Positions 38,344-47,375 of a DNA stretch of 64,000 bases are shown in pieces. A model generated the notes under the pieces. That model was not told the origin of the DNA. It was given only the letters and a program-made list of their open reading frames with translations, and searched no databases. The stretch's first letter is position 1; the number at the start of each line of letters is the position of its first letter. The translations under genes and the position numbers were made by a program. The stretch is from IMG/VR virus record IMGVR_UViG_3300028393_000019, positions 62,001-126,000 of that record, one strand, 5' to 3'.

Positions 38344-38543
38344 ACAGTATATAGCACCCGAATGGGTCCTGTGGGTCTATTTCAGATTCGCGTAAAAAAT
38401 TATAAAGAAGTACTTACAGTTTTATGGTGGTGAAAATACTTCGGTACCCATGCGCTACTAGCTATGTTAGTGTGTACTTACATGTATAGCCCCTCACCCC
38501 TCTGTGTCGAGATGAATGCCATTCGGTCGCCGGTCGAGAGAAG

Positions 38544-38586
38544 AAAAAAAATCCCCACCACCGGGAGCGAATCGGATAGTGAGGAT
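38544..38586 (-). terminator. Intrinsic terminator whose loop is AUUCGCUCC
   Basis: 13-bp stem with 2 G.U pairs and one bulge, followed by a U-tract. Confidence 0.8.
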
Positions 38587-38695
38587 CAAAACGAGGATAT
38601 GCCTCGTTTTAGGTGGGCTAGACCTAGCGGGAGCGAATCGCGTTGATTGGTCTAGCCCTACTGCTAAGGGCGCTCTTATGTGTGTTGTTGTATAC
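38544..38695 (-). ncRNA. Candidate anti-RBS small RNA / structured 3' UTR with two AUUCGCUCC loops
   Basis: Three hairpins (38615-38658, 38588-38610, 38551-38586); G.U pairs and U-tract fix the minus strand; loops complementary to GGAGCGAA early RBSs. Confidence 0.65.
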
Positions 38696-39597
38696 TAGCG
38701 TGAGCCCCTCATGCATGTTACTTCTGCTACAGCTTGCCACTTGTCCGGGAAGCTGGCTGCCAAGTCTGCTACCTTGAGCACTGTGCGCAGGCTCAGCTCA
38801 CGCATGCGATGCTTGTTGGAATCCACGAATGCAACCACTTCCAGCTTCTTCTCGTCAGTGAGCTCGTATGAATCCAGCATGCCATGCTCGGTAACTACCT
38901 GCTTGATGCGTAACACCTTCTCGCGTTCAGTGTCGATGGTAAGGTCCAAATAGTGGCAACGGCTCTCTAGTGCTTCCAAGTGATCCTGTAGCTTCTTGCT
39001 TTTCACGTGATCGAACTTGATGTTGGTAATGAAGATCGCACCGCCCTTGAACTCGAATGTGTTGGGCACACCTTCACTACGTAGCAAGCGACTGTCTGTG
39101 TTCCACGAGATCGTACGCTTCTTTGACGTATCTAACGCGGCCTTCAAGATGTTTAGACTGAGATCATCCAACAGGATCGAATCACAGTCGTCGAACACTA
39201 GGATGCTCTTCTTGTCTGAGAACTCGTACAGCTTGCTATACAAGCCAATGGCACTCATAGCGCCTTTGACGATCTCGTACTTCTTCAGCTTCTGATCCTG
39301 TGCGATATCAGCCAGCACATCATGCTTTGACAGAACCTTCTCTACACCGTAGCTCTTGCCCACGCCTGGGGGGCCTGTCACGATCATAGCTCGCACATCG
39401 CCCTTCTTTACAGCACGAGTCATGTCATCCAAGATCTCAAAGCGATCACGTAGACGATTCAGGATCTGTTCATCTGACTCGTGTGCGATGTTCTTCTTTA
39501 CGGGTTCTTGCTCTAGGCTCGCTGTGGTGCCTTTGCTGGTTTTTGGCTGTTTCTGAAGTGCCATTAGCATCTTACTGGTAACTACCTTTGTTGTCAT
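38695..39597 (-). CDS. AAA+-type P-loop ATPase
   Basis: Walker A GPPGVGKS, Walker B LVFDDCD, IFITN, ALESR. Confidence 0.85.
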   Translation of the reverse strand: MTTKVVTSKMLMALQKQPKTSKGTTASLEQEPVKKNIAHESDEQILNRLRDRFEILDDMTRAVKKGDVRAMIVTGPPGVGKSYGVEKVLSKHDVLADIAQDQKLKKYEIVKGAMSAIGLYSKLYEFSDKKSILVFDDCDSILLDDLSLNILKAALDTSKKRTISWNTDSRLLRSEGVPNTFEFKGGAIFITNIKFDHVKSKKLQDHLEALESRCHYLDLTIDTEREKVLRIKQVVTEHGMLDSYELTDEKKLEVVAFVDSNKHRMRELSLRTVLKVADLAASFPDKWQAVAEVTCMRGSR

Positions 39598-39626: not shown

Positions 39627-39655
39627 ATTGTACAGTCTCGTTGAGTCTGTGTCAA
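39627..39655 (-). promoter_or_regulatory. sigma70 promoter TTGACA-17-TACAAT
   Basis: Read directly. Confidence 0.8.
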
Positions 39656-39975
39656 TCCAATCGGCTGCCTGCGTAGGCTGTCAAGCCCAAAGCCTTCAGA
39701 TAGTTGGCCAGGGCATAGGCGCCTGCTTCTTTGATGTCCACGTTTTGCACGGGCAGATCTCCCGGATTCCACATGCTCAAACACTTGGGTTTGTAGTCCT
39801 TCTTGAACCCCGCGGCAATCAATTCCTTAGCCTGCTTTGAGTTGGTACGGTCCACGTAGACATCAACCCAAGCAAAGCCGCAAGCGCCGCGATCTCCGCC
39901 CCACTTTTGATATTCGGCCATGCTGGCTTGTTTGGCCAATGGAATGCCTGCTTGGATCTGTTCTGCTGTAATCAT
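39652..39975 (-). CDS. Hypothetical early protein
   Basis: AGGAGCGAC RBS; GACGFAWV motif. Confidence 0.85.
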   Translation of the reverse strand: MITAEQIQAGIPLAKQASMAEYQKWGGDRGACGFAWVDVYVDRTNSKQAKELIAAGFKKDYKPKCLSMWNPGDLPVQNVDIKEAGAYALANYLKALGLTAYAGSRLD

Positions 39976-40009
39976 AAGTCGCTCCTATAATTGCGTTGTT
40001 GAAGTGTAT

Positions 40010-40038
40010 ATTATACTACCAAAGCGTGGGGTTGTCAA
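40010..40038 (-). promoter_or_regulatory. sigma70 promoter TTGACA-17-TATAAT
   Basis: Perfect consensus. Confidence 0.85.
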
Positions 40039-40204
40039 CCGGACGCTCAGTGCGTTTCAGCATGAGAACGCCACAGCCCATGGTTGCTAATCCCAGGATC
40101 GCTACAAGGACACAGTCCAGGACGGGACCACCGGTTTCGATCCCACCCACCGCAGCCATGGTTAGCAGTAGGCCTGTAAAGATTAAGAATGTGCTTGATT
40201 TCAT
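40016..40204 (-). CDS. Small two-helix membrane protein
   Basis: Two hydrophobic segments; AAGGAG RBS. Confidence 0.75.
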   Translation of the reverse strand: MKSSTFLIFTGLLLTMAAVGGIETGGPVLDCVLVAILGLATMGCGVLMLKRTERPVDNPTLW

Positions 40205-40533
40205 GCTAGCTCCTTGTGCAGATCGCAGTAGTCAACTTCAGGTTCTTTGTAGGTAATAGAACCTTCGTACTCCAGCTGGCTCCGCTCGAAGTCGCTAAGG
40301 TAGCCTTCTGCTTCCACGCGGAATCCCACGATGTACTCTCTGCAGTAGTCATTTGATCGCTCGATGGAGCCACGTGCCATCTCAACGATCTCTGCAGGAT
40401 CGATGTTGCGAGGTGTGTTGAGGATCTTGTAGCTGGAACCGCCCTTGAACTTCCAATACTGTGGGCAAGCACCTTCGCCGTCCCAATCATGGGCACCGTA
40501 GTTCTCCATGTACTGTGTGTCAATTACTAGCAT
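40201..40533 (-). CDS. Hypothetical early protein
   Basis: Start moved to 40533 (MLVIDTQYMENYGAHDW...YWKFKGG); AGGAGCGAA RBS. Confidence 0.85.
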   Translation of the reverse strand: MLVIDTQYMENYGAHDWDGEGACPQYWKFKGGSSYKILNTPRNIDPAEIVEMARGSIERSNDYCREYIVGFRVEAEGYLSDFERSQLEYEGSITYKEPEVDYCDLHKELA

Positions 40534-40564
40534 AGTTTCGCTCCTAGTTAGTGTGTAAAGTATT

Positions 40565-40593
40565 ATTATACTGCCGTTTGGCCCGTTTGTCAA
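40565..40593 (-). promoter_or_regulatory. sigma70 promoter TTGACA-17-TATAAT
   Basis: Perfect consensus. Confidence 0.85.
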
Positions 40594-40838
40594 CAGACTG
40601 TGTAGGTTTGTCCCAGGCTGTCCAGTGCTTCTTGTTGTATTTTAGCCACATACTTGTTCACAGTCTTCAGCGCCTTGCGCTCCTTCTCGTCCACGTCAGG
40701 ACAGCCGTAGTTGGCACGGAAGTTGACCCACGCACTGAGTGTGCCCGCTCGATCTACACCAGTCACAGATCCTTTAAAGGATTCCATGTAATTCAACCGA
40801 TCACCGTTCAACAGTTCTATTGCTTTGGATAGTTTCAT
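40590..40838 (-). CDS. Hypothetical early protein
   Basis: AGGAGCGAAC RBS. Confidence 0.8.
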   Translation of the reverse strand: MKLSKAIELLNGDRLNYMESFKGSVTGVDRAGTLSAWVNFRANYGCPDVDEKERKALKTVNKYVAKIQQEALDSLGQTYTVC

Positions 40839-40862
40839 AGTTCGCTCCTTCTTTGTTAATGT

Positions 40863-41114
40863 TCAGCAGTCTGGGTCAAAGCTCATCCACTCGTCGTACT
40901 CAGAGGGCTGACCGTCGTCCTCGTAGTCCATAGCACGTGGAAACTGATCCTCGGGCTCAGGGGCTTCGCAGATCACCACTTCACCATCGGAATCAAGCTC
41001 AACCCGAGGATGGCTGTAGCCATCGTAGGTCTCGTAACTGCCACGCAAGATCACGTGGGCATCCTGTGGCATTTGCTCCAATGCCTTGATCAAGTCTCTT
41101 ACTGTAGTTGTCAT
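40863..41114 (-). CDS. Hypothetical early protein
   Basis: AGGAGCGAG RBS; EYDEWMSFDPDC C-terminus. Confidence 0.8.
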   Translation of the reverse strand: MTTTVRDLIKALEQMPQDAHVILRGSYETYDGYSHPRVELDSDGEVVICEAPEPEDQFPRAMDYEDDGQPSEYDEWMSFDPDC

Positions 41115-41250
41115 ATCTCGCTCCTTCTCTTGTTCAGCTTAGGCCGAGTCTCCAAACTCGCTTCGTATCCCTTGGCTACGACCCTTTTTGCATTTCTGCG
41201 TGGGTCCTTGCATTTGAGGATCGCCTTGCTTTCTAACTGTTCATGTGCTT

Positions 41251-41279
41251 ATTATAGCTTCAAAAAATAACCCGCGCAA
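41251..41279 (-). promoter_or_regulatory. sigma70-like promoter TTGCGC-17-TATAAT overlapping terminator
   Basis: Read directly. Confidence 0.6.
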
Positions 41280-41292
41280 CCGGCGGGTTATT
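41262..41292 (-). terminator. Intrinsic terminator after tRNA
   Basis: AATAACCCGC/GCGGGTTATT stem plus T-run. Confidence 0.8.
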
Positions 41293-41293
41293 C

Positions 41294-41370
41294 TGGTGGG
41301 CCCACCTGGACTCGAACCAGGGACCAAAGGATTATGAGTCCTCTGCTCTAACCAACTGAGCTATAGGCCC
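41294..41370 (-). tRNA. tRNA with CAU anticodon, probably tRNA-Ile2 (lysidine type)
   Basis: GGGCCTATAGCTCAGTTGGTTAGAGCAGAGGACTCATAATCCTTTGGTCCCTGGTTCGAGTCCAGGTGGGCCCACCA; encoded CCA; C4-G69 and C5-G68 pairs as in Ile2 rather than Met. Confidence 0.92.
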
Positions 41371-41546
41371 GTAAATCGGTTGACTTCTACTGGATCTTGC
41401 CCGTCTTCATCTTTGAGGATGTAGACTTCTTCGCATTCCCACATGTGATCTTCAGCTATCAGCTCGGCTTCTTTGAGGGTAGCAACACAATCGATCAGCT
41501 CATCTCGCCCATCGATTGTGCCCCAAACTTCATACTGAACGAACAT
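41361..41546 (-). CDS. Small acidic hypothetical protein
   Basis: 61-aa ORF; 3' end overlaps tRNA 5' end by 10 nt. Confidence 0.65.
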   Translation of the reverse strand: MFVQYEVWGTIDGRDELIDCVATLKEAELIAEDHMWECEEVYILKDEDGQDPVEVNRFTGL

Positions 41547-41548
41547 GT

Positions 41549-41911
41549 TTAGGCTGTGAACGGAGTGTTCTCGTCTTCGGTCACTGCAGGTGCAGCCTTG
41601 ACTGCCTTGGTGGTCTTAGCTGTAGCGGTCTTGGCCACTGCTTTGACAACTGCTGTTGCCTTGGGAGCCTTCTCATCCAAGTACTCCGTGATAGCTGCCT
41701 GAGCATGTGCTCCTGAGAAATCATCCATGCCTTTGATGGCTTGAATACCTGCATACTTGGTGTATGGCTTCTCGAGATCTACCAAGGTGATATCCTCGTG
41801 ACCATGTTTAGCTAGCACCTTGATGCGCATCACATCATTTGCGAAACGTACCTTGTACTCACCGTTGAGCTTTGATACACCAAAAACGTTATACTGTTTA
41901 TCTGTTGCCAT
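41549..41911 (-). CDS. Hypothetical protein with Ala/Lys-rich tail
   Basis: GAGG RBS; KVRFAND motif. Confidence 0.85.
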   Translation of the reverse strand: MATDKQYNVFGVSKLNGEYKVRFANDVMRIKVLAKHGHEDITLVDLEKPYTKYAGIQAIKGMDDFSGAHAQAAITEYLDEKAPKATAVVKAVAKTATAKTTKAVKAAPAVTEDENTPFTA

Positions 41912-41969
41912 GTTGTTACCTCTATGTGTGTGGTTTAAGTTGTTATGCCAGTTTCCTTAGCATGTGTTA

Positions 41970-41998
41970 ATTGTACTATCTTTTGGTCTGCTTGTCAA
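41970..41998 (-). promoter_or_regulatory. sigma70 promoter TTGACA-17-TACAAT
   Basis: Read directly. Confidence 0.8.
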
Positions 41999-42260
41999 CC
42001 AATTTCTTCATCTTTTGGACATCTTTTCGGCTAGTTGCCACGGGTAGCGGCTTGCCAAACTCTCTGTCCAAATAGTGTGCCAGCATCTTGCCCTTGATGT
42101 TGGTAACCAGATCAAACTGGTCCTGATCAGGGCAGATGAACCGATACGGGCTGTGTCCCCAGCTCATCGTCTTGAGAAACTGATTGAACAGTCTGCGATG
42201 CTCTTTGATGTCCACGTCGAACTCAACCAGCGGTCGCAGATGGAAATCAAGTAGGCTCAC
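41976..42260 (-). CDS. Hypothetical protein
   Basis: GTG start; SWGHSPYRF motif. Confidence 0.7.
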   Translation of the reverse strand: MSLLDFHLRPLVEFDVDIKEHRRLFNQFLKTMSWGHSPYRFICPDQDQFDLVTNIKGKMLAHYLDREFGKPLPVATSRKDVQKMKKLVDKQTKR

Positions 42261-42387
42261 AGGGCCTCTCTTTCCACTGCTTGATCACTTGAGCTAGCGG
42301 TTCGAAGTTCCACTCTCGGATCTTGGGGCGAATGCGATCGGTCTGCTTCTGATCGTGCTCTTTATTCTTCTGCTGGTTGGTCTTCAT
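42247..42387 (-). CDS. Small hypothetical protein (46 aa, not in the ORF track)
   Basis: GAGG RBS; fills the gap between neighbours. Confidence 0.5.
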   Translation of the reverse strand: MKTNQQKNKEHDQKQTDRIRPKIREWNFEPLAQVIKQWKERPCEPT

Positions 42388-42961
42388 TGGTTTCCTCTTC
42401 ATATTCTGCTACTGTTTCTGAAATGCCCATACAGTCATCTAACGCTGTAGGGATCGATTCTCTGATCTGCTCAGAGGTCATTGCTGTGATATCGTAGTAG
42501 TCATCACCGTTCTCGTCGTAGATCCCGCAGAATCCCATGCCCGACTCATAGTAGTAGGCCCGAACTGTGTAGCCCTGCTCCATCAATGCTTCATAGACTC
42601 CACAGGGTGGGGCCCACGCACTGTCGAAGCCGAATGTGACGCCAGTCTTGCCATCATGTGCATCGTCGTATTCCACTGCTTCGTAGGGTTCTACATCCCA
42701 CTTGGTGCCCCACTCGTTCACGCAGTAGTCATACCAAGTGCTGTAGCCATACTTCTCAAGGTTGGACTTCTCTGCTGCCTCAAGAGCGATCTGCTCGGGA
42801 TTGTCAGCGGAACCAACTCGACCCGCTACAATGTGCAGTTCTTTGGGCACAGGCTTGGCAAAGTCGCAGAACTTGCCTTCGTTGATCGCACCTACCAACT
42901 CATACATCTTCGCAGGGTCAGTGTGGTTAATCTCTACTGTGTTGTTGCACCAATTAGGCAT
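42362..42961 (-). CDS. DUF1281/YubB ferredoxin-like family protein
   Basis: MPNWCNN, WYDYCVNEWGTKWD, FDSAWAPP and YYESGMGFCG. Confidence 0.75.
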   Translation of the reverse strand: MPNWCNNTVEINHTDPAKMYELVGAINEGKFCDFAKPVPKELHIVAGRVGSADNPEQIALEAAEKSNLEKYGYSTWYDYCVNEWGTKWDVEPYEAVEYDDAHDGKTGVTFGFDSAWAPPCGVYEALMEQGYTVRAYYYESGMGFCGIYDENGDDYYDITAMTSEQIRESIPTALDDCMGISETVAEYEEETNEDQPAEE

Positions 42962-42987
42962 ACGCTGTTCTCCTAAGTTAAAACACT

Positions 42988-43016
42988 ATTATACAACCAA
43001 AAGGCCTAGAAGTCAA
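42988..43016 (-). promoter_or_regulatory. sigma70 promoter TTGACT-17-TATAAT
   Basis: Read directly. Confidence 0.8.
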
Positions 43017-43029
43017 CCGTTGTTTCTAC

Positions 43030-43174
43030 GCCACAGAATAAGTTCCGGGAGGGTTTTGGGAAGTCTCACCCGGGTCGACTAGCAGGTTTTGTAGGGTCTC
43101 TTATGAATCGCTAACCTATGGCTAGCCCTACAGGAACGCACTTGTCCCTCAGCGATGTCTAGGAGCGAACTAGC
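43030..43174 (-). ncRNA. Second candidate anti-RBS element
   Basis: Non-coding; CUAG-UUCGCUC-CUAG hairpin; shares short motifs with the 38544 element. Confidence 0.4.
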
Positions 43175-43343
43175 TGTTTACCGTAGCATTAGGGCTGAAT
43201 TCTTCATCCTGGATACCATTCAAGGTCAACCAATCGTAGACCATCTCTACGGGTATGTCCAAGGTCTTGGCTATGTTCTTCTCGGTCAAGCCCTCGATGT
43301 AGAGTTGCTCGATGTCATATGCGATTTCTGATAGTTTACTCAT
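43170..43343 (-). CDS. Small HTH-like protein (57 aa, not in the ORF track)
   Basis: MSKLSEIAYDIEQLYIEGLTEKNIAKTLDIPVEMVYDWL. Confidence 0.7.
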   Translation of the reverse strand: MSKLSEIAYDIEQLYIEGLTEKNIAKTLDIPVEMVYDWLTLNGIQDEEFSPNATVNS

Positions 43344-43512
43344 CATTCATTTCCTCTGGTAGATATGCAATTAAGTTGCTTCTGGGAACACTCTTTAACA
43401 GCTCTTCAACAGCAGTTAGATCCCCACCCTCGAGATCTACAGCGATCTGATCTAGAACCCGGTCGATCAAGTCCGATAGGGCTACAGCTCGTTTAGTTTC
43501 AAATCCAGTCAT
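43336..43512 (-). CDS. Small hypothetical protein (58 aa, not in the ORF track)
   Basis: AAGGAG RBS; coupled to the downstream ORF. Confidence 0.7.
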   Translation of the reverse strand: MTGFETKRAVALSDLIDRVLDQIAVDLEGGDLTAVEELLKSVPRSNLIAYLPEEMNDE

Positions 43513-43524
43513 TCTATCTCCTTG

Positions 43525-44013
43525 CTAAACAGCGGGGCCGGTCTTGGCCTTTTGCTTGAGGGCTGTGAGCACACGCTTCCAGCGACCACTTTCACGAGTA
43601 CGGTAGAACCACTTGCCCGACTCTAGGCTGTCATCGTAGCGATACAGGTAGAAGTATTCGCACCATGAACCCTGGTAGTGATCTACAGCAGTTGCGGCGG
43701 ATTCAAAGCTCTTGTAGGGAGCATCTTCGCCGCGATCACGTGAGTAGAAGGTGGTCATATCGCCGTAGAGCTTCTCGTACTCATCTTCGGGTAACTCGCT
43801 GTCCAGCCTTGAGAACTCGTGCTTGATGCCGATCTCGGCTCGCAGTGAGCTGATGTCGCCCAGGGCGATCAAGTTGTTGACCTTAGGGCTAGCACCGTAG
43901 TTGTTCTCTAAGATCTCGCCGTTGTGTTCAAGGTAGCCATCCCAGTGGCAGTAGACGGCCTTGACACGACCACTACTAGGGTTCTCAATACCAATCATTG
44001 ATCTAGTACCCAT
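43525..44013 (-). CDS. Phage hypothetical protein (MGTRS...YCHWDGY type)
   Basis: Start moved to 44013; GGAGG RBS. Confidence 0.85.
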   Translation of the reverse strand: MGTRSMIGIENPSSGRVKAVYCHWDGYLEHNGEILENNYGASPKVNNLIALGDISSLRAEIGIKHEFSRLDSELPEDEYEKLYGDMTTFYSRDRGEDAPYKSFESAATAVDHYQGSWCEYFYLYRYDDSLESGKWFYRTRESGRWKRVLTALKQKAKTGPAV

Positions 44014-44014
44014 A

Positions 44015-44221
44015 TCAGCCTCCGAACACTTCTTTGTTAAGGATCTCGTTCTCAACCAAGTCGTAGCAAGCATTCATCGCTTGAGTCACGAAGGTGTAGA
44101 CCAGGGCCTTTTCTTTGGCCGGCAGTTGCTCAATGCGCTCCTGCAGTTCGGGCAAAGTGGGGGTGTAGAAGAACCCATTGCGTGGAATTGGGTTTTGCAC
44201 TTGATCGTAAATACCTGACAT
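44015..44221 (-). CDS. Hypothetical early protein
   Basis: AGGAGCGAA RBS. Confidence 0.8.
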   Translation of the reverse strand: MSGIYDQVQNPIPRNGFFYTPTLPELQERIEQLPAKEKALVYTFVTQAMNACYDLVENEILNKEVFGG

Positions 44222-44253
44222 AAGTTTCGCTCCTTCTGTGTGTGTAAGTGTAT

Positions 44254-44282
44254 ATTATAACACGGGCCAGGGCCCGTGTCAA
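44254..44282 (-). promoter_or_regulatory. sigma70 promoter TTGACA-17-TATAAT with palindromic spacer
   Basis: ACACGGGCC-AG-GGCCCGTGT at 44260-44279. Confidence 0.85.
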
Positions 44283-44289
44283 TCTATAG

Positions 44290-44643
44290 TTAAATACCCT
44301 GGAACGCAGTAAGGGCTTCTTGTGCGCCCGCATCCAAATACACCGCATCCATAGCCTTTTGCTTCTCACGTGCTACAGTTGCACGATACACTTCCAGCTC
44401 TGCGCTCTTAGCTTCCATAGCAGGCCACACAACATCAGAGGGGTTAAGGTAAGGACCCGTGTAGTCTACCTTGTCTGCCTTCAGCGTAATGTCGCCGCTC
44501 TTAATGCCTTCAAACACCATGCCCCACGTGGGCTGTTGCGGACGACCGCTGGCACCAAACAGTTCTACTGCCTTAGCCTGCACCTTAGCCTGTGCTACTT
44601 CGTTAAGACGACGAACAAAATACTCTCGAGATTGTGCTTCCAT
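44290..44643 (-). CDS. Hypothetical early protein
   Basis: Start moved to 44643; AGGAGCGAA RBS. Confidence 0.8.
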   Translation of the reverse strand: MEAQSREYFVRRLNEVAQAKVQAKAVELFGASGRPQQPTWGMVFEGIKSGDITLKADKVDYTGPYLNPSDVVWPAMEAKSAELEVYRATVAREKQKAMDAVYLDAGAQEALTAFQGI

Positions 44644-44653
44644 TTTTCGCTCC

Positions 44654-44776
44654 TTAGTTTGCTGTGTTGTAAACTCTGTACTTGCCTTCTGCATCGTAAT
44701 ACCAAACGCCGCCTATGTTGTGGTATCCTTTTTTGCGGAATAGTGTTGCATAATATTTCGCGTAATTAAATGCCAT
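44654..44776 (-). CDS. Small protein (40 aa, MAFNYAKYYATLFRKKG..., not in the ORF track)
   Basis: AAGGAAG RBS directly after a promoter; stop abuts the next RBS. Confidence 0.65.
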   Translation of the reverse strand: MAFNYAKYYATLFRKKGYHNIGGVWYYDAEGKYRVYNTAN

Positions 44777-44802
44777 CTTACTTCCTTTGTTGCTAAGTGT
44801 AT

Positions 44803-44831
44803 ATTATAGCACCAAACTAAAGCCCTGTCAA
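44803..44831 (-). promoter_or_regulatory. sigma70 promoter TTGACA-17-TATAAT
   Basis: Perfect consensus. Confidence 0.85.
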
Positions 44832-44842
44832 CCCCAGGGTCT

Positions 44843-45106
44843 TTACATACTCCAGTAGCTCTCACTGGCGGGCGAGCAATAGTAGGGCGTGTCGTAACGC
44901 TCTGTGAACCGGCCCCCACCCATCATGTTGGTCTTCTCGACCATAGTCACGTGGATCTCACAACGATAGCCCTCACTGGCCGGGTACTTGCGAGCATAGA
45001 CCTCTTGGATAGCACCACGATCAGCAGTGCTATGGTCTACCTTGCGATCCAGTCGCTCCCCGGACTTTCGACGGGCATCACGTTTATAAACTTCTACTGT
45101 GTACAT
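44843..45106 (-). CDS. Hypothetical early protein
   Basis: AGGAGCGAAC RBS; TPYYCSPASESYWSM C-terminus. Confidence 0.85.
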   Translation of the reverse strand: MYTVEVYKRDARRKSGERLDRKVDHSTADRGAIQEVYARKYPASEGYRCEIHVTMVEKTNMMGGGRFTERYDTPYYCSPASESYWSM

Positions 45107-45139
45107 AAGTTCGCTCCTTATCTAACTGTCTAAGCATTA

Positions 45140-45168
45140 ATTATAGTGCCAAATCAGTTGTGTGTCAA
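45140..45168 (-). promoter_or_regulatory. sigma70 promoter TTGACA-17-TATAAT
   Basis: Perfect consensus. Confidence 0.85.
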
Positions 45169-45386
45169 CCCCAGGCCTTGAATAACCCGAATAGGCATAT
45201 GGTTAATGCTACTACGTTGGTAACCAATTGTGGCTTATTTGCCACACGTATGCTCCAGATCAAGTAGCAGATCCCGCCCATGAATCCAGCCACGATGTTC
45301 CATGGATAGATGTCAAAGCTCATGAGCGTATACATGGCCAGGAAGCATCCAGTGCCGATCCACTGGATGATGTCGTTGAACTTCAA
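45165..45386 (-). CDS. Small three-helix membrane protein
   Basis: Hydrophobic pattern. Confidence 0.75.
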   Translation of the reverse strand: MKFNDIIQWIGTGCFLAMYTLMSFDIYPWNIVAGFMGGICYLIWSIRVANKPQLVTNVVALTICLFGLFKAWG

Positions 45387-46087
45387 GCCGCTTCCTTCAA
45401 ATGGATCACGAACCCACTGTAGTCCTTCTTGGCACGACCCTTGGCTTTCAACCCAATGATGCCTACCCGGGGGTCTAAGAAGCGCAGATCATCTTCATCC
45501 GCACTGTACACACCTTCGGGGATCCGGTCGTAGACCACGGCAACATTCATGCCCTGAGCCACTGCCTTGGGAATGTCTGCGGCATTGGATTCAGCACGGC
45601 TGAACGTGAGGTGATAGTTGGGGATATGTGCGGTCTTGCGTCCTAGGATCTTGGTATAGTCATAGAACTGTACTGTAGGGAACATTTGGAAGATGTTCAA
45701 GCCAGTGTCGCCGATCGTGTACTTTTCCCACGCTAGATCACTAGTACCGTTCAAGCGGAACACGGGCTTTAGGCCCTGCTTACGGGCATAATTAATAGCC
45801 TTGTCGATGTCATTGGTTAGATCCTTCATGAAAGCATCACGATCGAAGAAGAATGCAACCGTCTTGCGTATACGTGCTCGCTGTATAACGTTGGTGTTCT
45901 CACCCCGCTTGAACATGCCCCCACGTCCAGCAGTGTTGAGACAGCTAGCAATGCATCCAGGGGTAGCCTTGGGACAGGTGTTGTGACCGCTCAGGGTGCT
46001 GGGCGCGAGATGCAGGATGAAGCTTAGATAGCCCCGAGCCGTGCCCTTTTGGATCTTGGGGTTAGCTGTACTCAGTAGTTTAAACAT
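45383..46087 (-). CDS. GP88/DUF7227-like phage protein
   Basis: CP.A..GC...CL, RLNGTSD, FYDYTK and YHLTFS motifs; AGGAGCGAAC RBS. Confidence 0.65.
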   Translation of the reverse strand: MFKLLSTANPKIQKGTARGYLSFILHLAPSTLSGHNTCPKATPGCIASCLNTAGRGGMFKRGENTNVIQRARIRKTVAFFFDRDAFMKDLTNDIDKAINYARKQGLKPVFRLNGTSDLAWEKYTIGDTGLNIFQMFPTVQFYDYTKILGRKTAHIPNYHLTFSRAESNAADIPKAVAQGMNVAVVYDRIPEGVYSADEDDLRFLDPRVGIIGLKAKGRAKKDYSGFVIHLKEAA

Positions 46088-46119
46088 GGTTCGCTCCTTG
46101 TTTTGCAGTGTAAGTGTAT

Positions 46120-46148
46120 ATTATACTGTCAATCGATCTGTATGTCAA
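46120..46148 (-). promoter_or_regulatory. sigma70 promoter TTGACA-17-TATAAT
   Basis: Perfect consensus. Confidence 0.85.
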
Positions 46149-46326
46149 CCACTTGACCCTTTGAAAAGATCCAGTATTCGTTGATAGGGCACGAGCTGGA
46201 TCCAGATGATACCCAAACACACGCATTGCCTGGTTGCACTACCGCATGCTCGGTTCCCCGTTCTAGTAGCCGAGCCAGCACTACCAGTAGCTCAAACTCG
46301 TTGACTCCGGGCCTTACTTCAACCAT
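46129..46326 (-). CDS. Small hypothetical protein
   Basis: Start moved to 46326 (MVEVRPGVNEFELL). Confidence 0.65.
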   Translation of the reverse strand: MVEVRPGVNEFELLVVLARLLERGTEHAVVQPGNACVWVSSGSSSCPINEYWIFSKGQVVDIQID

Positions 46327-46327
46327 A

Positions 46328-46531
46328 TCAACCCCAATCTTTGAAGTCACCGTTGCGCTCGTTGTCCATGTAGCCCTGCCAATAGGCTGCCACTTCTGCC
46401 TCTGTGAGCTCTGTGACGGGTTCACCATTGTAAGTGCCCTGGGGATATTTGTGTGGACGAGCTGGACGACGGTAGTAGCTGTCTGCACTACCTCTATCAT
46501 AGCATCCGCCATGTACTCGATCTATAACCAT
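46328..46531 (-). CDS. Small hypothetical protein
   Basis: GAGGAG RBS; HGGCYDRGSADSYY motif. Confidence 0.8.
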   Translation of the reverse strand: MVIDRVHGGCYDRGSADSYYRRPARPHKYPQGTYNGEPVTELTEAEVAAYWQGYMDNERNGDFKDWG

Positions 46532-46557
46532 TTTTCTGCTCCTCTAACTAAAACACT

Positions 46558-46586
46558 ATTATAACGCCAAAAGGCACTGCTGTCAA
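46558..46586 (-). promoter_or_regulatory. sigma70 promoter TTGACA-17-TATAAT
   Basis: Perfect consensus. Confidence 0.85.
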
Positions 46587-46613
46587 GCAATGCCCTTAGA
46601 CTCTACAGGGTTA

Positions 46614-46994
46614 TTACAGTTCCATACTAGCGTAGCCGTCGTCTTGCATGCCCTGCTCTGTAAAGCTAACACTAGTCCCTAGCAAGTCGCTTACAGCCGC
46701 CTCAAAGCCCGTGTCTGTGTACATTCGCCAGCTTCCCTCTACATCAGCGCCGTCTACGCCGTCTACGTCATAGCAGACTGCAATGTGTGTGCTAATGTCG
46801 CCATCGCCGTCGTAGTCTGTCTCTGCAATGTGTATGCTTGTAATTGTAACTTCCTCAATGTCGCAGTCCCACATACTGTCGCCTGCAAGTTGTACTTTTA
46901 CTCGGCACTTGTACTCCGTGTTAACAGTGTCGTCTTCTTGTTTAACTTCTACTCTTTTTAGTTTTTTACTAACTTTAAACTGTGTTGCTTGCAT
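46614..46994 (-). CDS. Acidic hypothetical early protein
   Basis: AGGAGCGAA RBS; YTDTGFE...FTEQGMQ motif. Confidence 0.85.
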   Translation of the reverse strand: MQATQFKVSKKLKRVEVKQEDDTVNTEYKCRVKVQLAGDSMWDCDIEEVTITSIHIAETDYDGDGDISTHIAVCYDVDGVDGADVEGSWRMYTDTGFEAAVSDLLGTSVSFTEQGMQDDGYASMEL

Positions 46995-47016
46995 AAGTTT
47001 CGCTCCTTAAAAAACA

Positions 47017-47045
47017 ATTATACTACACTTTGTCCAAAATGTCAA
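47017..47045 (-). promoter_or_regulatory. sigma70 promoter TTGACA-17-TATAAT
   Basis: Perfect consensus. Confidence 0.85.
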
Positions 47046-47077
47046 TGCACTGTAATAAGCCCTTACGGGCTGTAGGG

Positions 47078-47320
47078 TTATGCTGTTTGCTTTGCTTGCA
47101 AACGTGCAATCTCTAGTTGCATTTGCACAATTTTTTCTTTTTCTAGTTTAGCAATAAACTTTACTTTTTTTGCTTCGATATCTCTGCGGAACTTTGCTGT
47201 GCTTACATTTAGCATATAAGACGTTTGTCCGTAGCTTTGCATTGTGTTTTGCATACAGTAAACTTTAGCACGAGCGGCAGACATTGCGAATGCATTAACT
47301 GTGTTTGCGTATTGACCCAT
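47078..47320 (-). CDS. Hypothetical early protein
   Basis: AGGAGTCGAA RBS. Confidence 0.8.
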   Translation of the reverse strand: MGQYANTVNAFAMSAARAKVYCMQNTMQSYGQTSYMLNVSTAKFRRDIEAKKVKFIAKLEKEKIVQMQLEIARLQAKQTA

Positions 47321-47346
47321 TTCGACTCCTTTGTTGCTAAGTTGTT

Positions 47347-47375
47347 ATTATAGCGTCGTTTGGCTAACGTGTCAA
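47347..47375 (-). promoter_or_regulatory. sigma70 promoter TTGACA-17-TATAAT
   Basis: Perfect consensus. Confidence 0.85.

What the first reader, a model, noticed from the sequence alone, without database searches (positions are those of the whole stretch)
43030..43174. Second anti-RBS element with up to 12-nt complementarity to early RBSs
Seen: at the end of ORF 43170..43343 the minus strand reads GCUAG-UUCGCUC-CUAGAC, a short CUAG/CUAG stem presenting the same seed. It matches AGGAGCGAACUA (12 nt, gene 40838), CUAGGAGCGAA (11 nt, gene 40533) and AGGAGCGAACU (11 nt, gene 45106). The 140-nt non-coding stretch also shares GUAGGGCUAG, CAUAAGAG and GCGAUUC with the 38544-38695 element. On the plus strand the GGAGCGAA has no ATG behind it, so it is not an RBS. 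Inference: a paralogous or ancestral copy of the same RNA regulator.
Basis: partly seen in the sequence, partly recalled or inferred. Interest (0 to 1): 0.7.

Follow-up and report, generated by a model that had tools for sequence, protein, structure and literature searches.

The report
Second anti-RBS RNA hairpin in jumbo phage
Just after a small early gene of an uncultured freshwater jumbo phage lies a conserved RNA hairpin whose loop is the exact complement of the ribosome-binding site shared by the phage's early genes, so it is probably a second copy of an RNA switch that masks those sites, though no experiment has shown this.

Summary
On the minus-strand transcript the stop codon of ORF 43170-43346 sits inside CUAG-UUCGCUC-CUAG (43173-43159). 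The seed UUCGCUCC complements GGAGCGAA, the ribosome-binding site (RBS) of seven early genes in the window.

The element is not a chance match or a decayed inverted RBS.
- The 15-mer is exact in 8 related IMG/VR phage contigs.
- A 20-mer that includes it occurs in 32 metagenome stretches (23 distinct contexts). It is always within 10 nt of a stop codon, and usually a GC hairpin with a U-rich tail and the next sigma-70 promoter follow.
- In 160 related loci, GGAGCGAA is almost always a promoter-proximal RBS.
- Its complement is never in an open frame there, and 59% of copies lie just upstream of a T-run.
- The two motifs co-occur: 4.2 such RBSs per 3 kb where the seed is present, 0.23 where it is absent.

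In the window's lineage a ~95-nt unit (43175-43080) is 98% identical to a relative whose flanking genes are 68-80% identical.

It is not a structural paralogue of the two-hairpin RNA at 38544-38657: a covariance model of that RNA misses it, and the other shared words are marginal.

Best reading: a single-seed module in a 3'UTR that masks early RBSs. Transcript ends and regulation are untested. No published equivalent was found.

The parts
43159..43173 (-). Type-A seed hairpin CUAG-UUCGCUC-CUAG. The 4-bp stem pairs 43173-43170 with 43162-43159 and encloses a 7-nt loop. The stop codon of the upstream gene (43172-43170) lies inside the 5' arm.
   Evidence: Sequence. The hairpin appears in the minimum-free-energy fold of the local 92 nt. 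The 15-mer is exact in 8 family contigs and in 23 distinct metagenome contexts. Among the nine sequences folded the fifth stem pair is G-C in 4, A-U in 2 and mismatched in 3; the window copy has G.A.
43162..43169 (-). Anti-RBS seed UUCGCUCC, the reverse complement of the early RBS word GGAGCGAA. With its flanks it is complementary to AGGAGCGAAC, the family RBS consensus.
   Evidence: Flank consensus: A at position -1 in 346 of 381 sites, C as the commonest base at +8. Duplex energies.
43080..43175 (-). Conserved ~95-nt non-coding unit of the window's lineage. It holds the seed hairpin, hairpin AGGGAC/GUUCCU (43149-43132) and hairpin GUAGG...CCUAC (43131-43091) with inner stem GCUAGCC/GGUUAGC. 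An alternative closing helix pairs GCUAGU (43174-43169) with GCUAGU (43083-43078).
   Evidence: 88 of 90 positions are identical to L169 over 43175-43086, against 119 of 149 in the p58a coding part and 68% in p199. In six lineage variants, 5 of the 26 predicted pairs carry a single-sided substitution and every one keeps the pair, while changes pile up in the internal loop.
43035..43074 (-). Weak terminator-like hairpin: CCCGG(G) pairs with CCCGG around a ~19-nt loop holding CAAAACC, followed by the tail AACUUAUUCU. This is not a canonical intrinsic terminator.
   Evidence: Sequence. The terminator scan finds nothing here. L169, L196 and L204 have a homologous weak hairpin followed by CUUUCUUU.
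42988..43016 (-). Sigma-70-type promoter TTGACT-17-TATAAT for the next gene (42362-42961). It marks the 3' limit of the spacer.
   Evidence: 11 of 12 consensus positions.
43170..43346 (-). Upstream gene p58a: 58 aa, HTH-like, ending ...TVNS*. The element lies in its 3'UTR.
   Evidence: ORF. Sub-threshold match to Sigma70_r4_2 (E = 0.0037, 17.3 bits against a 25.7-bit cutoff). Homologues occur in 48 distinct contexts, most of them followed directly by a promoter and a minority by the seed hairpin.
40537..47006 (-). Predicted targets: seven RBSs that read GGAGCGAA, at 40537-44, 40841-48, 44226-33, 44646-53, 45110-17, 46090-97 and 46999-47006 (plus-strand coordinates). Near variants precede the ATGs at 41114, 39975 and 39597.
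   Evidence: Five of the seven follow a TTGACA-17-TATAAT promoter.
38544..38657 (-). The canonical two-seed RNA after the AAA-ATPase gene: hairpin 1 with seed 38637-38630, a middle hairpin, and a terminator hairpin with seed 38571-38564 followed by U8. It is context for this finding, not part of the element.
   Evidence: Folding z = -4.45. Covariance-model score 67 bits. The hairpin-1 stem covaries in 45 relatives.

Best explanation
The element is a single-seed anti-RBS module in the 3'UTR of an early operon. That operon starts at the promoter at 44282 and ends with p58a.

Its short hairpin, placed at the stop codon, displays UUCGCUC(C) in the loop. This seed pairs with AGGAGCGAAC, a private extension of the Shine-Dalgarno sequence found on most promoter-proximal early genes of this phage clade. 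Pairing covers the site where the 30S subunit binds and so lowers early-gene translation. The module most likely acts in trans, either as part of the mRNA or as a stable 3' fragment protected by the downstream hairpins. It would work alongside the two-seed RNA at 38544-38657 to give feedback or shut-off of the early class.

Shown: the sequence, the complementarity, conservation, exclusive non-coding location next to terminators, co-occurrence with the RBS word, and hairpin display (by covariation for the sister element).

Inferred: that the RNAs actually pair, that pairing represses, the timing, and whether a processed small RNA exists.
For: - The RBS word is real and specific. 371 of 381 distinct GGAGCGAA contexts in relatives have an ATG 1-5 nt downstream, and 356 have a -10 box in the 60 nt upstream, mostly 17-23 nt from the motif.
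- The CGAA part does not match the canonical SD extension. Canonical words GGAGGTGA and AAGGAGGT are rare there (3-5 copies against about 25 expected).
- Of all RBS variants, only GGAGCGAA has an enriched reverse complement: 237 copies against about 25 expected.
- Of 167 distinct antisense contexts, 0 lie in an open frame, and 99 have a run of 6 or more T within 90 nt. The figure for random positions is 3.5%.
- The sister hairpin displays the seed in a loop closed by a covarying stem: covariation score 0.395 against 0.152 in shuffles (0 of 500 reach it) and at most 0.144 when partners are slid.
- The type-A 15-mer is the only invariant block among diverged contigs. It has 23 distinct metagenome contexts, and it can replace the canonical RNA after p300 in L178.
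- Co-occurrence: 4.19 GGAGCGA-type RBSs per 3 kb where the seed is present (n = 48) against 0.23 where it is absent (n = 13). Pseudomonas phage PA5oct, the closest cultured relative, has neither.
- The lineage unit is 98% conserved next to genes at 68-80% identity.
- The region is present in RNA libraries from lake water at about the depth of its flanks.
Against: - There is no direct RNA evidence. The metatranscriptome data are unstranded assembler contigs, DNA carry-over cannot be excluded, and contig ends follow strain variation, not transcript ends.
- The window copy has only a 4-bp stem with a G.A at the fifth pair, no canonical terminator, and no fold stability above shuffles over 161 nt.
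- The seed and RBS words are nearly invariant, so seed-target covariation could not be shown.
- Most p58a homologues lack the element: of 48 contexts, 3 carry the exact seed hairpin and 1 a variant. It is therefore dispensable.
- The co-occurrence counts are not phylogenetically independent.
- Seven of the nine aligned type-A sequences were found by exact-pattern search, which inflates the apparent invariance.
Confidence: 0.5

Rival explanations
1. A cis-acting mask or insulator. On transcripts that read through from upstream promoters, the seed folds back onto an RBS of the same molecule. The partner would be either the first-gene RBS at 44233, about 1.07 kb upstream, or the RBS of the next gene. 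The affected gene would then be translated only from certain transcripts, or the mRNA ends would be tied together.
For: The transcription unit that starts at the promoter at 44282 begins with GGAGCGAA (44226-44233) and ends with the seed. No strong terminator follows in the window, so read-through is likely, and the depth in RNA libraries is continuous. In L016/L187 the gene after the element has a perfect GGAGCGAA RBS.
Against: The next gene in the window has AGGAGAACAGCG and a weak predicted duplex (-13.5 kcal/mol, rank 20 of 43). In most relatives the next RBS is GGAGAGCGA, with a 1-nt bulge, or some other word. The canonical sister RNA is followed by a terminator and not by a GGAGCGAA gene. 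There are 2-3 seeds per genome against 7-13 RBS copies.
Confidence: 0.2
2. A DNA-level or protein-binding site. GGAGCGAA/TTCGCTCC, here within the inverted repeat CTAG-N7-CTAG, would be an operator or protein recognition word. Candidates are the HTH-like p58a, a RegA-like repressor or a RegB-like nuclease. The antisense copies would then be binding sites and not pairing partners.
For: The word sits at a fixed distance, mostly 17-23 nt, from the -10 box, so an operator just downstream of early promoters is conceivable. The element abuts an HTH-like gene. CTAG...CTAG is palindromic as DNA.
Against: Copies without any promoter still sit 2-4 nt before an ATG (40848 and 44653). The strand asymmetry is absolute: sense copies are RBSs, antisense copies are only in non-coding 3' regions. 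The flanks of antisense copies change in a compensatory way that keeps an RNA stem, which a double-stranded DNA site does not need.
Confidence: 0.1
3. No present function in this genome. The copy would be a relic of recombination or of an inverted RBS cassette, or just the 5' part of a decayed terminator region left after a gene between p58a and p199 was lost.
For: In L043, L017 and many metagenome relatives another gene lies between the element and p199, whereas the window has only a 208-nt spacer. The stem and terminator are weaker than in relatives. Most p58a homologues lack the element.
Against: The 95-nt unit is 98% identical to L169 although the flanking genes differ by 20-32%. Six lineage variants keep all stems. 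The 15-mer is invariant across diverged contigs. There is no inverted -10 box beside it.
Confidence: 0.1
4. The seed targets something other than phage RBSs, for example host mRNAs. Another candidate is a host 16S rRNA segment, since from memory GGAGCGAAC occurs in helix 24 of many bacterial 16S rRNAs.
For: Only the sequence coincidence, recalled from memory and not tested here.
Against: The host is unknown. Co-occurrence with phage RBS copies is explained without any host target. That rRNA segment is base-paired in mature ribosomes (established knowledge).
Confidence: 0.05

Closest known systems
c4 antisense RNA of phages P1 and P7 (and the related P4 CI RNA)
   Same: It is a phage-encoded RNA made from the same operon as its target. 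Short complementary sequences displayed in loops pair around an RBS and block translation (PMC12197685).
   Different: c4 controls one target (icd-ant) for lysogenic immunity and is processed to a defined small RNA. Here one 8-10-nt seed matches 7-13 early RBSs per genome in lytic-type jumbo phages. It occurs in 2-4 copies at two loci, and no processing has been shown.
Bacterial small RNAs with C-rich loops that mask SD sequences (UCCC-motif RNAs such as RsaE/RoxS), and 3'UTR-derived sRNAs such as CpxQ and SroC (named from memory)
   Same: A pyrimidine-rich seed sits in a hairpin loop complementary to G-rich RBSs. The element lies at the 3' end of an mRNA next to its terminator. There are many targets.
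   Different: Those RNAs are host-encoded and pair with generic SD sequences. Here the seed needs the private extension GCGAA, which is carried only by the phage's own early leaders. No chaperone dependence or processing is known.
T4 RegB endoribonuclease and RegA translational repressor
   Same: The proposed role is the same: class-wide shut-off of early mRNAs through their ribosome-binding sites (review PMC3014915, listed but not read; established knowledge).
   Different: RegB and RegA are proteins. Here the proposed effector is RNA, and recognition is by base pairing.
The canonical two-seed RNA of the same phage clade (window 38544-38657)
   Same: The seed is identical, it is displayed in a hairpin loop, it lies in a 3'UTR or next to a terminator, and it has the same predicted targets. 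The two forms swap positions in L178/G003.
   Different: This element has a single seed. Its flanks are CUAG/CUAG, not the CCGA...CGG of the canonical form. Its complementarity is longer (10 nt to the consensus). The covariance model of the two-seed RNA does not match it.

Membership tests
Two-seed RNA downstream of the AAA-ATPase gene (this clade; model R1) | Full-length match to a covariance model built from 45 relatives | tested here: not met
   R1 scores 67.1 bits on 38544-38657. Nothing is found at 43.0-43.2 kb at E <= 10 with filters off.
Two-seed RNA downstream of the AAA-ATPase gene (this clade; model R1) | Two hairpins with invariant GAUUCGCUCCC and CCGAUUCGCUCCCGG | tested here: not met
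   There is one seed only, flanked by CUAG/UAG. A second GCGAUUC lacks GCUCC and varies in L201.
Two-seed RNA downstream of the AAA-ATPase gene (this clade; model R1) | Identical 8-nt seed UUCGCUCC on the early-transcript strand, in non-coding sequence | tested here: met
Type-A single-seed module (CUAG-UUCGCUC-CUAG next to a stop codon) | Exact 15-mer within 10 nt of the stop codon of the upstream gene | tested here: met
   The window copy overlaps the stop codon. The same holds in 8 IMG/VR contigs and in 23 metagenome contexts.
Type-A single-seed module (CUAG-UUCGCUC-CUAG next to a stop codon) | A GC-rich hairpin with a U-rich tail within ~10-30 nt, then the -35 box of the next promoter | tested here: inconclusive
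   This is clear in L043, L017, L178 and most metagenome contexts. In the window lineage ~95 nt of other hairpins precede a weak hairpin with the tail AACUUAUUCU, and the terminator scan is negative.
Intrinsic (Rho-independent) terminator | A GC-rich stem followed directly by a U-tract | tested here: not met
   No site lies between 43030 and 43174.
c4-type phage antisense RNA | Loop sequences complementary to the RBS region of a target in the same operon | tested here: met
   The loop UUCGCUC(C) faces GGAGCGAA RBSs, including the first gene of its own unit at 44233.
c4-type phage antisense RNA | Processing to a discrete small RNA, with demonstrated repression | not testable with these tools
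   Only unstranded contigs of metatranscriptomes are available.
Any Rfam family | Match at or near the gathering score | tested here: not met
   Only the tRNA is found in the window. Nothing lies on the element's hairpins or either seed at E <= 5; the one nearby chance-level match (sR60 snoRNA, 43185-43211, 19.6 bits against a gathering score of 50, E = 0.39) sits inside the p58a coding sequence.

The most novel reading that the evidence does not exclude
A clade of freshwater jumbo phages runs its whole sigma-70-driven early gene class on a private RBS, AGGAGCGAAC. It also carries several RNA modules, including this one, whose loop is an orthogonal anti-SD sequence that outcompetes the 30S subunit. 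This would give RNA-based, class-wide feedback or shut-off of early translation, the RNA counterpart of T4 RegB/RegA. Modules would be gained, lost and swapped between operon ends.
Probability: 0.4. Interest if true: 0.85.

Novelty: new variant of a known kind. Interest (0 to 1): 0.62.

Why it matters
If the pairing is real, temporal control in large lytic phages can be built from a shared RBS extension plus a few short RNA seeds at operon ends. That mechanism has been described for single targets (P1 c4) but not for a whole gene class.

It would also explain why early leaders in this clade keep an 8-10-nt word that 16S rRNA pairing does not require.

It would give a simple signature for finding such circuits in metagenomes: an RBS word whose reverse complement appears only in terminator-proximal hairpin loops.

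The second element shows that the system is modular. The same seed appears in different hairpin frames and at interchangeable positions.

Tried and rejected
- **Cultured phages.** A distant blastn search of the locus found no match. The closest cultured relative by the AAA-ATPase, Pseudomonas phage PA5oct at 47% identity, has no element after the homologous gene and only one GGAGCGAA in 287 kb.
- **Rfam.** Searches at the gathering score and at E <= 5 gave nothing on the element itself.
- **RNAalifold on the MAFFT alignment of the two-seed RNA.** It recovered only three invariant pairs, because the variable stems were misaligned. A motif-anchored analysis and a stated structure were used instead.
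- **Seed-target covariation.** The few seed variants are not matched by RBS changes: AUCGCUCC in L016 and L047, CUCGCUCC in L165 and L166, AGUCGCUCC in L127. The result is uninformative.
- **Metatranscriptomes.** Four lake-water RNA runs hold the region, but only as unstranded contigs. Contig breaks at 42944-42977 and 43254-43283 coincide with strain variants, not RNA ends. No small-RNA peak is visible.
- **Wider search for the lineage-specific unit.** A gapped pattern found only L169 and the window's own contig in IMG/VR.
- **Literature.** Searches for the motif strings and for phage anti-SD small RNAs found primers and general reviews only.
- **Independent promoter inside p58a.** The 9-of-12 match at 43261-43233 is rejected because its -35 box is lost in L169.
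- **Decayed inverted RBS.** Rejected on conservation.

Full report
**Setting.** The window is bases 62,001-126,000 of a 265,680-bp IMG/VR record of an uncultured jumbo phage, estimated 72% complete. Near-complete relatives are 345-356 kb. All relatives come from lake and other freshwater metagenomes. From about 57.9 kb to 37.3 kb the minus strand carries small early-type genes. At least twelve promoters that match TTGACA-17-TATAAT in 11-12 of 12 positions drive them.

**The observation.** It is correct.
- The minus strand reads ...AACAGCUAG|UUCGCUCC|UAGAC.
- The TAG stop of the 58-aa ORF 43170-43346 is at 43172-43170.
- The seed is at 43169-43162.
- CUAG (43173-43170) can pair with CUAG (43162-43159) around a 7-nt loop.
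- GGAGCGAA occurs 11 times in the window against 1.03 expected.
- Seven minus-strand copies lie 2-4 nt before an ATG, five of them 20-25 nt after a -10 box.
- The three transcript-antisense copies (43162, 38630, 38564) are the only ones in the whole record.
- The stated 12-, 11- and 11-nt complementarities are right.
- Predicted duplexes with the seven GGAGCGAA start regions (-16.6 to -26.0 kcal/mol) take the six best ranks of 43.

**Is it chance?** Counts within one genome cannot settle this, so I used relatives. Protein-anchored searches gave 160 loci (1.63 Mb), oriented along early transcription.
- They hold 543 sense and 237 antisense copies of the word, against about 25 expected per strand.
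- Of 381 distinct sense contexts, 371 have an ATG 1-5 nt downstream and 356 have a -10 box in the 60 nt upstream, mostly 17-23 nt from the motif. GGAGCGAA is therefore the RBS of promoter-proximal early genes. Its consensus is A-GGAGCGAA-C.
- Of 167 distinct antisense contexts, none lies in an open frame, and 59% have a T-run within 90 nt. For random positions the figure is 3.5%.
- No other RBS variant has an enriched complement.
- Loci with a seed after the AAA-ATPase gene have 4.19 GGAGCGA-type RBSs in the 3 kb upstream (n = 48). Loci without a seed have 0.23 (n = 13). PA5oct, the nearest cultured relative, has neither. These counts are not phylogenetically independent.

**The sister element.** Nearly every relative has, after the AAA-ATPase ('p300') gene, an RNA-like element with two hairpins, invariant GAUUCGCUCCC and CCGAUUCGCUCCCGG, and a terminator.
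- The stem that closes the first seed loop covaries: score 0.395 against 0.152 in shuffles (0 of 500 reach it) and at most 0.144 when partners are slid (anchored analysis).
- The window copy folds with z = -4.45.
- Displaying the seed in a loop is thus a selected feature of the family.

**The element in question.** The 15-mer CTAGTTCGCTCCTAG is exact in 8 family contigs of IMG/VR. The other 12 hits lack any sense motif and look like chance.
- The 20-mer AAYAGCTAGTTCGCTCCTAG occurs in 32 metagenome stretches, which make 23 distinct contexts.
- In an alignment of nine contigs with 51% mean column identity it is the only invariant block.
- It always lies within 10 nt of a stop codon. This is usually the stop of a p58a homologue. 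In L041 and L171 the stop sits 3-4 nt upstream of the block (a different upstream gene in L041, a p58a-like one in L171). In L178 it is the stop of the AAA-ATPase itself, followed by a perfect terminator.
- The usual layout is stop, then seed hairpin, then 5-25 nt, then a GC hairpin with a U-rich tail, then the TTGACA of the next promoter.
- Among the nine sequences folded the fifth stem pair is G-C in four, A-U in two and mismatched in three. The window copy has G.A.
- Only a minority of p58a homologues carry the element: of 48 contexts, 3 have the exact form and 1 a variant.
- Other relatives have 2-3 tandem seeds at a second site in its place.
- The second site is therefore recurrent, but variable in form and dispensable.

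**The window's lineage.** Here the spacer is longer.
- From 43175 to 43086 it is 88 of 90 identical to L169. The p58a coding part is 119 of 149 identical, p199 is 68%, and the spacer beyond 43080 is about 50%.
- Six lineage variants share two further hairpins. In 5 of the 26 predicted pairs one side has changed, and every change keeps the pair, mostly through G.U. Changes accumulate in an internal loop.
- With transitions, each single-sided change has roughly a one-in-two chance of keeping the pair. This is mild support for structure, not proof.
- The words GCGAUUC and CAUAAGAG lie in that variable loop.

**Relation to 38544-38695.** A covariance model of the two-seed RNA finds only 38544-38657 in the window.
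- Outside the seed, the best local alignment is GTAGGGCTAG-CCA (p about 0.025).
- GCGATTC lies at the same distance in both elements, but it is not conserved in L201.
- I conclude that the two elements share the seed, the display principle and the kind of position, and that they exchange positions between genomes. The 43.1-kb element is not a copy of the whole RNA.

**Mechanism.** I commit to RBS masking by base pairing.
- The loop and its flanks match 10 nt of the RBS consensus, against about 6 nt (AAGGAG) available to the 16S tail. That comparison rests on established SD knowledge and is an inference.
- Trans action is favoured because seeds are few, sit at operon ends next to terminators, and the canonical element is not followed by a target gene.
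- Cis action on read-through transcripts is the main rival.
- A double-stranded-DNA or protein site is unlikely, given the strict strand asymmetry and the compensatory stems.

**RNA evidence.** Four lake metatranscriptomes hold the region. In one, a single error-free contig spans 42978-43283 at a depth like its flanks. These are unstranded assembler contigs and may include DNA. Transcription, ends and processing remain unshown.

**Comparison with known systems.** No Rfam family matches the element, and literature searches found no description.
- The nearest known system is the c4 RNA of P1 and P7, whose loop sequences mask an RBS in the same operon (PMC12197685).
- It also resembles C-rich-loop and 3'UTR-derived bacterial small RNAs.
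- In proposed role it resembles T4 RegB/RegA. The last two comparisons rest on memory or established knowledge.

**Verdict.** This is a real, conserved second anti-RBS module and a new variant of a known regulatory kind. Function is inferred, not shown.

Noticed in passing
window 38481-38502 (minus strand), and the equivalent place in relatives (e.g. L043, L020, L126): A G-rich box followed by TATA(T/C)A (GAGGGGTGAGGGGCTATACAT) lies 40-100 nt after the terminator of the two-seed RNA. It recurs in at least 32 of 78 relatives within 230 nt of the p300 stop. It may be a promoter of a non-sigma-70 type for the next gene block.
   Followed up: partly
window 43079-43141 (minus strand): A 20-codon GTG ORF with an SD-like GAGGGA lies inside the conserved 95-nt unit. 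It is cut to 14 codons in L201, and the variants show a mix of synonymous and non-synonymous changes (hand count on A3). It is probably not coding, but this is not excluded.
   Followed up: partly
L040 5210-5247, L049 4860-4928, L076 4968-5005; record G003 110791/110820: These relatives carry tandem arrays of 2-3 seeds with a 29-32-nt period, in CCUAGG or CCG/CGG stems followed by a hairpin. The arrays lie at a second site in the early region of relatives that lack the CUAG form.
   Followed up: partly
L127 259-274: A variant of the element, CUAG-AGUCGCUCC-UAG, sits at the p58a stop. It is complementary to GGAGCGACU and not GGAGCGAA, while the two canonical seeds in the same contig are unchanged.
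   Followed up: no
window 41294-41370 (minus strand): A tRNA-Met (CAU) gene lies inside the early region. Its bin has 4-5 times the contig depth of its neighbours in all four RNA runs, although tRNAs of other organisms may add to that.
   Followed up: no
relatives' early regions (L009-L168): The canonical extended SD words GGAGGTGA and AAGGAGGT are rare (3-5 copies against about 25 expected). GGAGCGAC (133 copies) and GGAGCACA (142 copies) are further over-represented RBS words whose complements are not enriched.
   Followed up: no
window 39627-47375 (minus strand): Nine promoters match the sigma-70 consensus TTGACA-17-TATAAT in all 12 positions, and three more in 11 of 12. Several share the leader ATACACTTACAC. 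Such a dense array of consensus promoters is unusual.
   Followed up: no
window 38695-39597 and 45383-46087 (minus strand): The gene before the two-seed RNA is an AAA-ATPase-like protein (PHROG 1250, sub-threshold AAA matches) with homologues in T4-like and PA5oct-like phages. The protein from 45383-46087 belongs to Pfam GP88.
   Followed up: no
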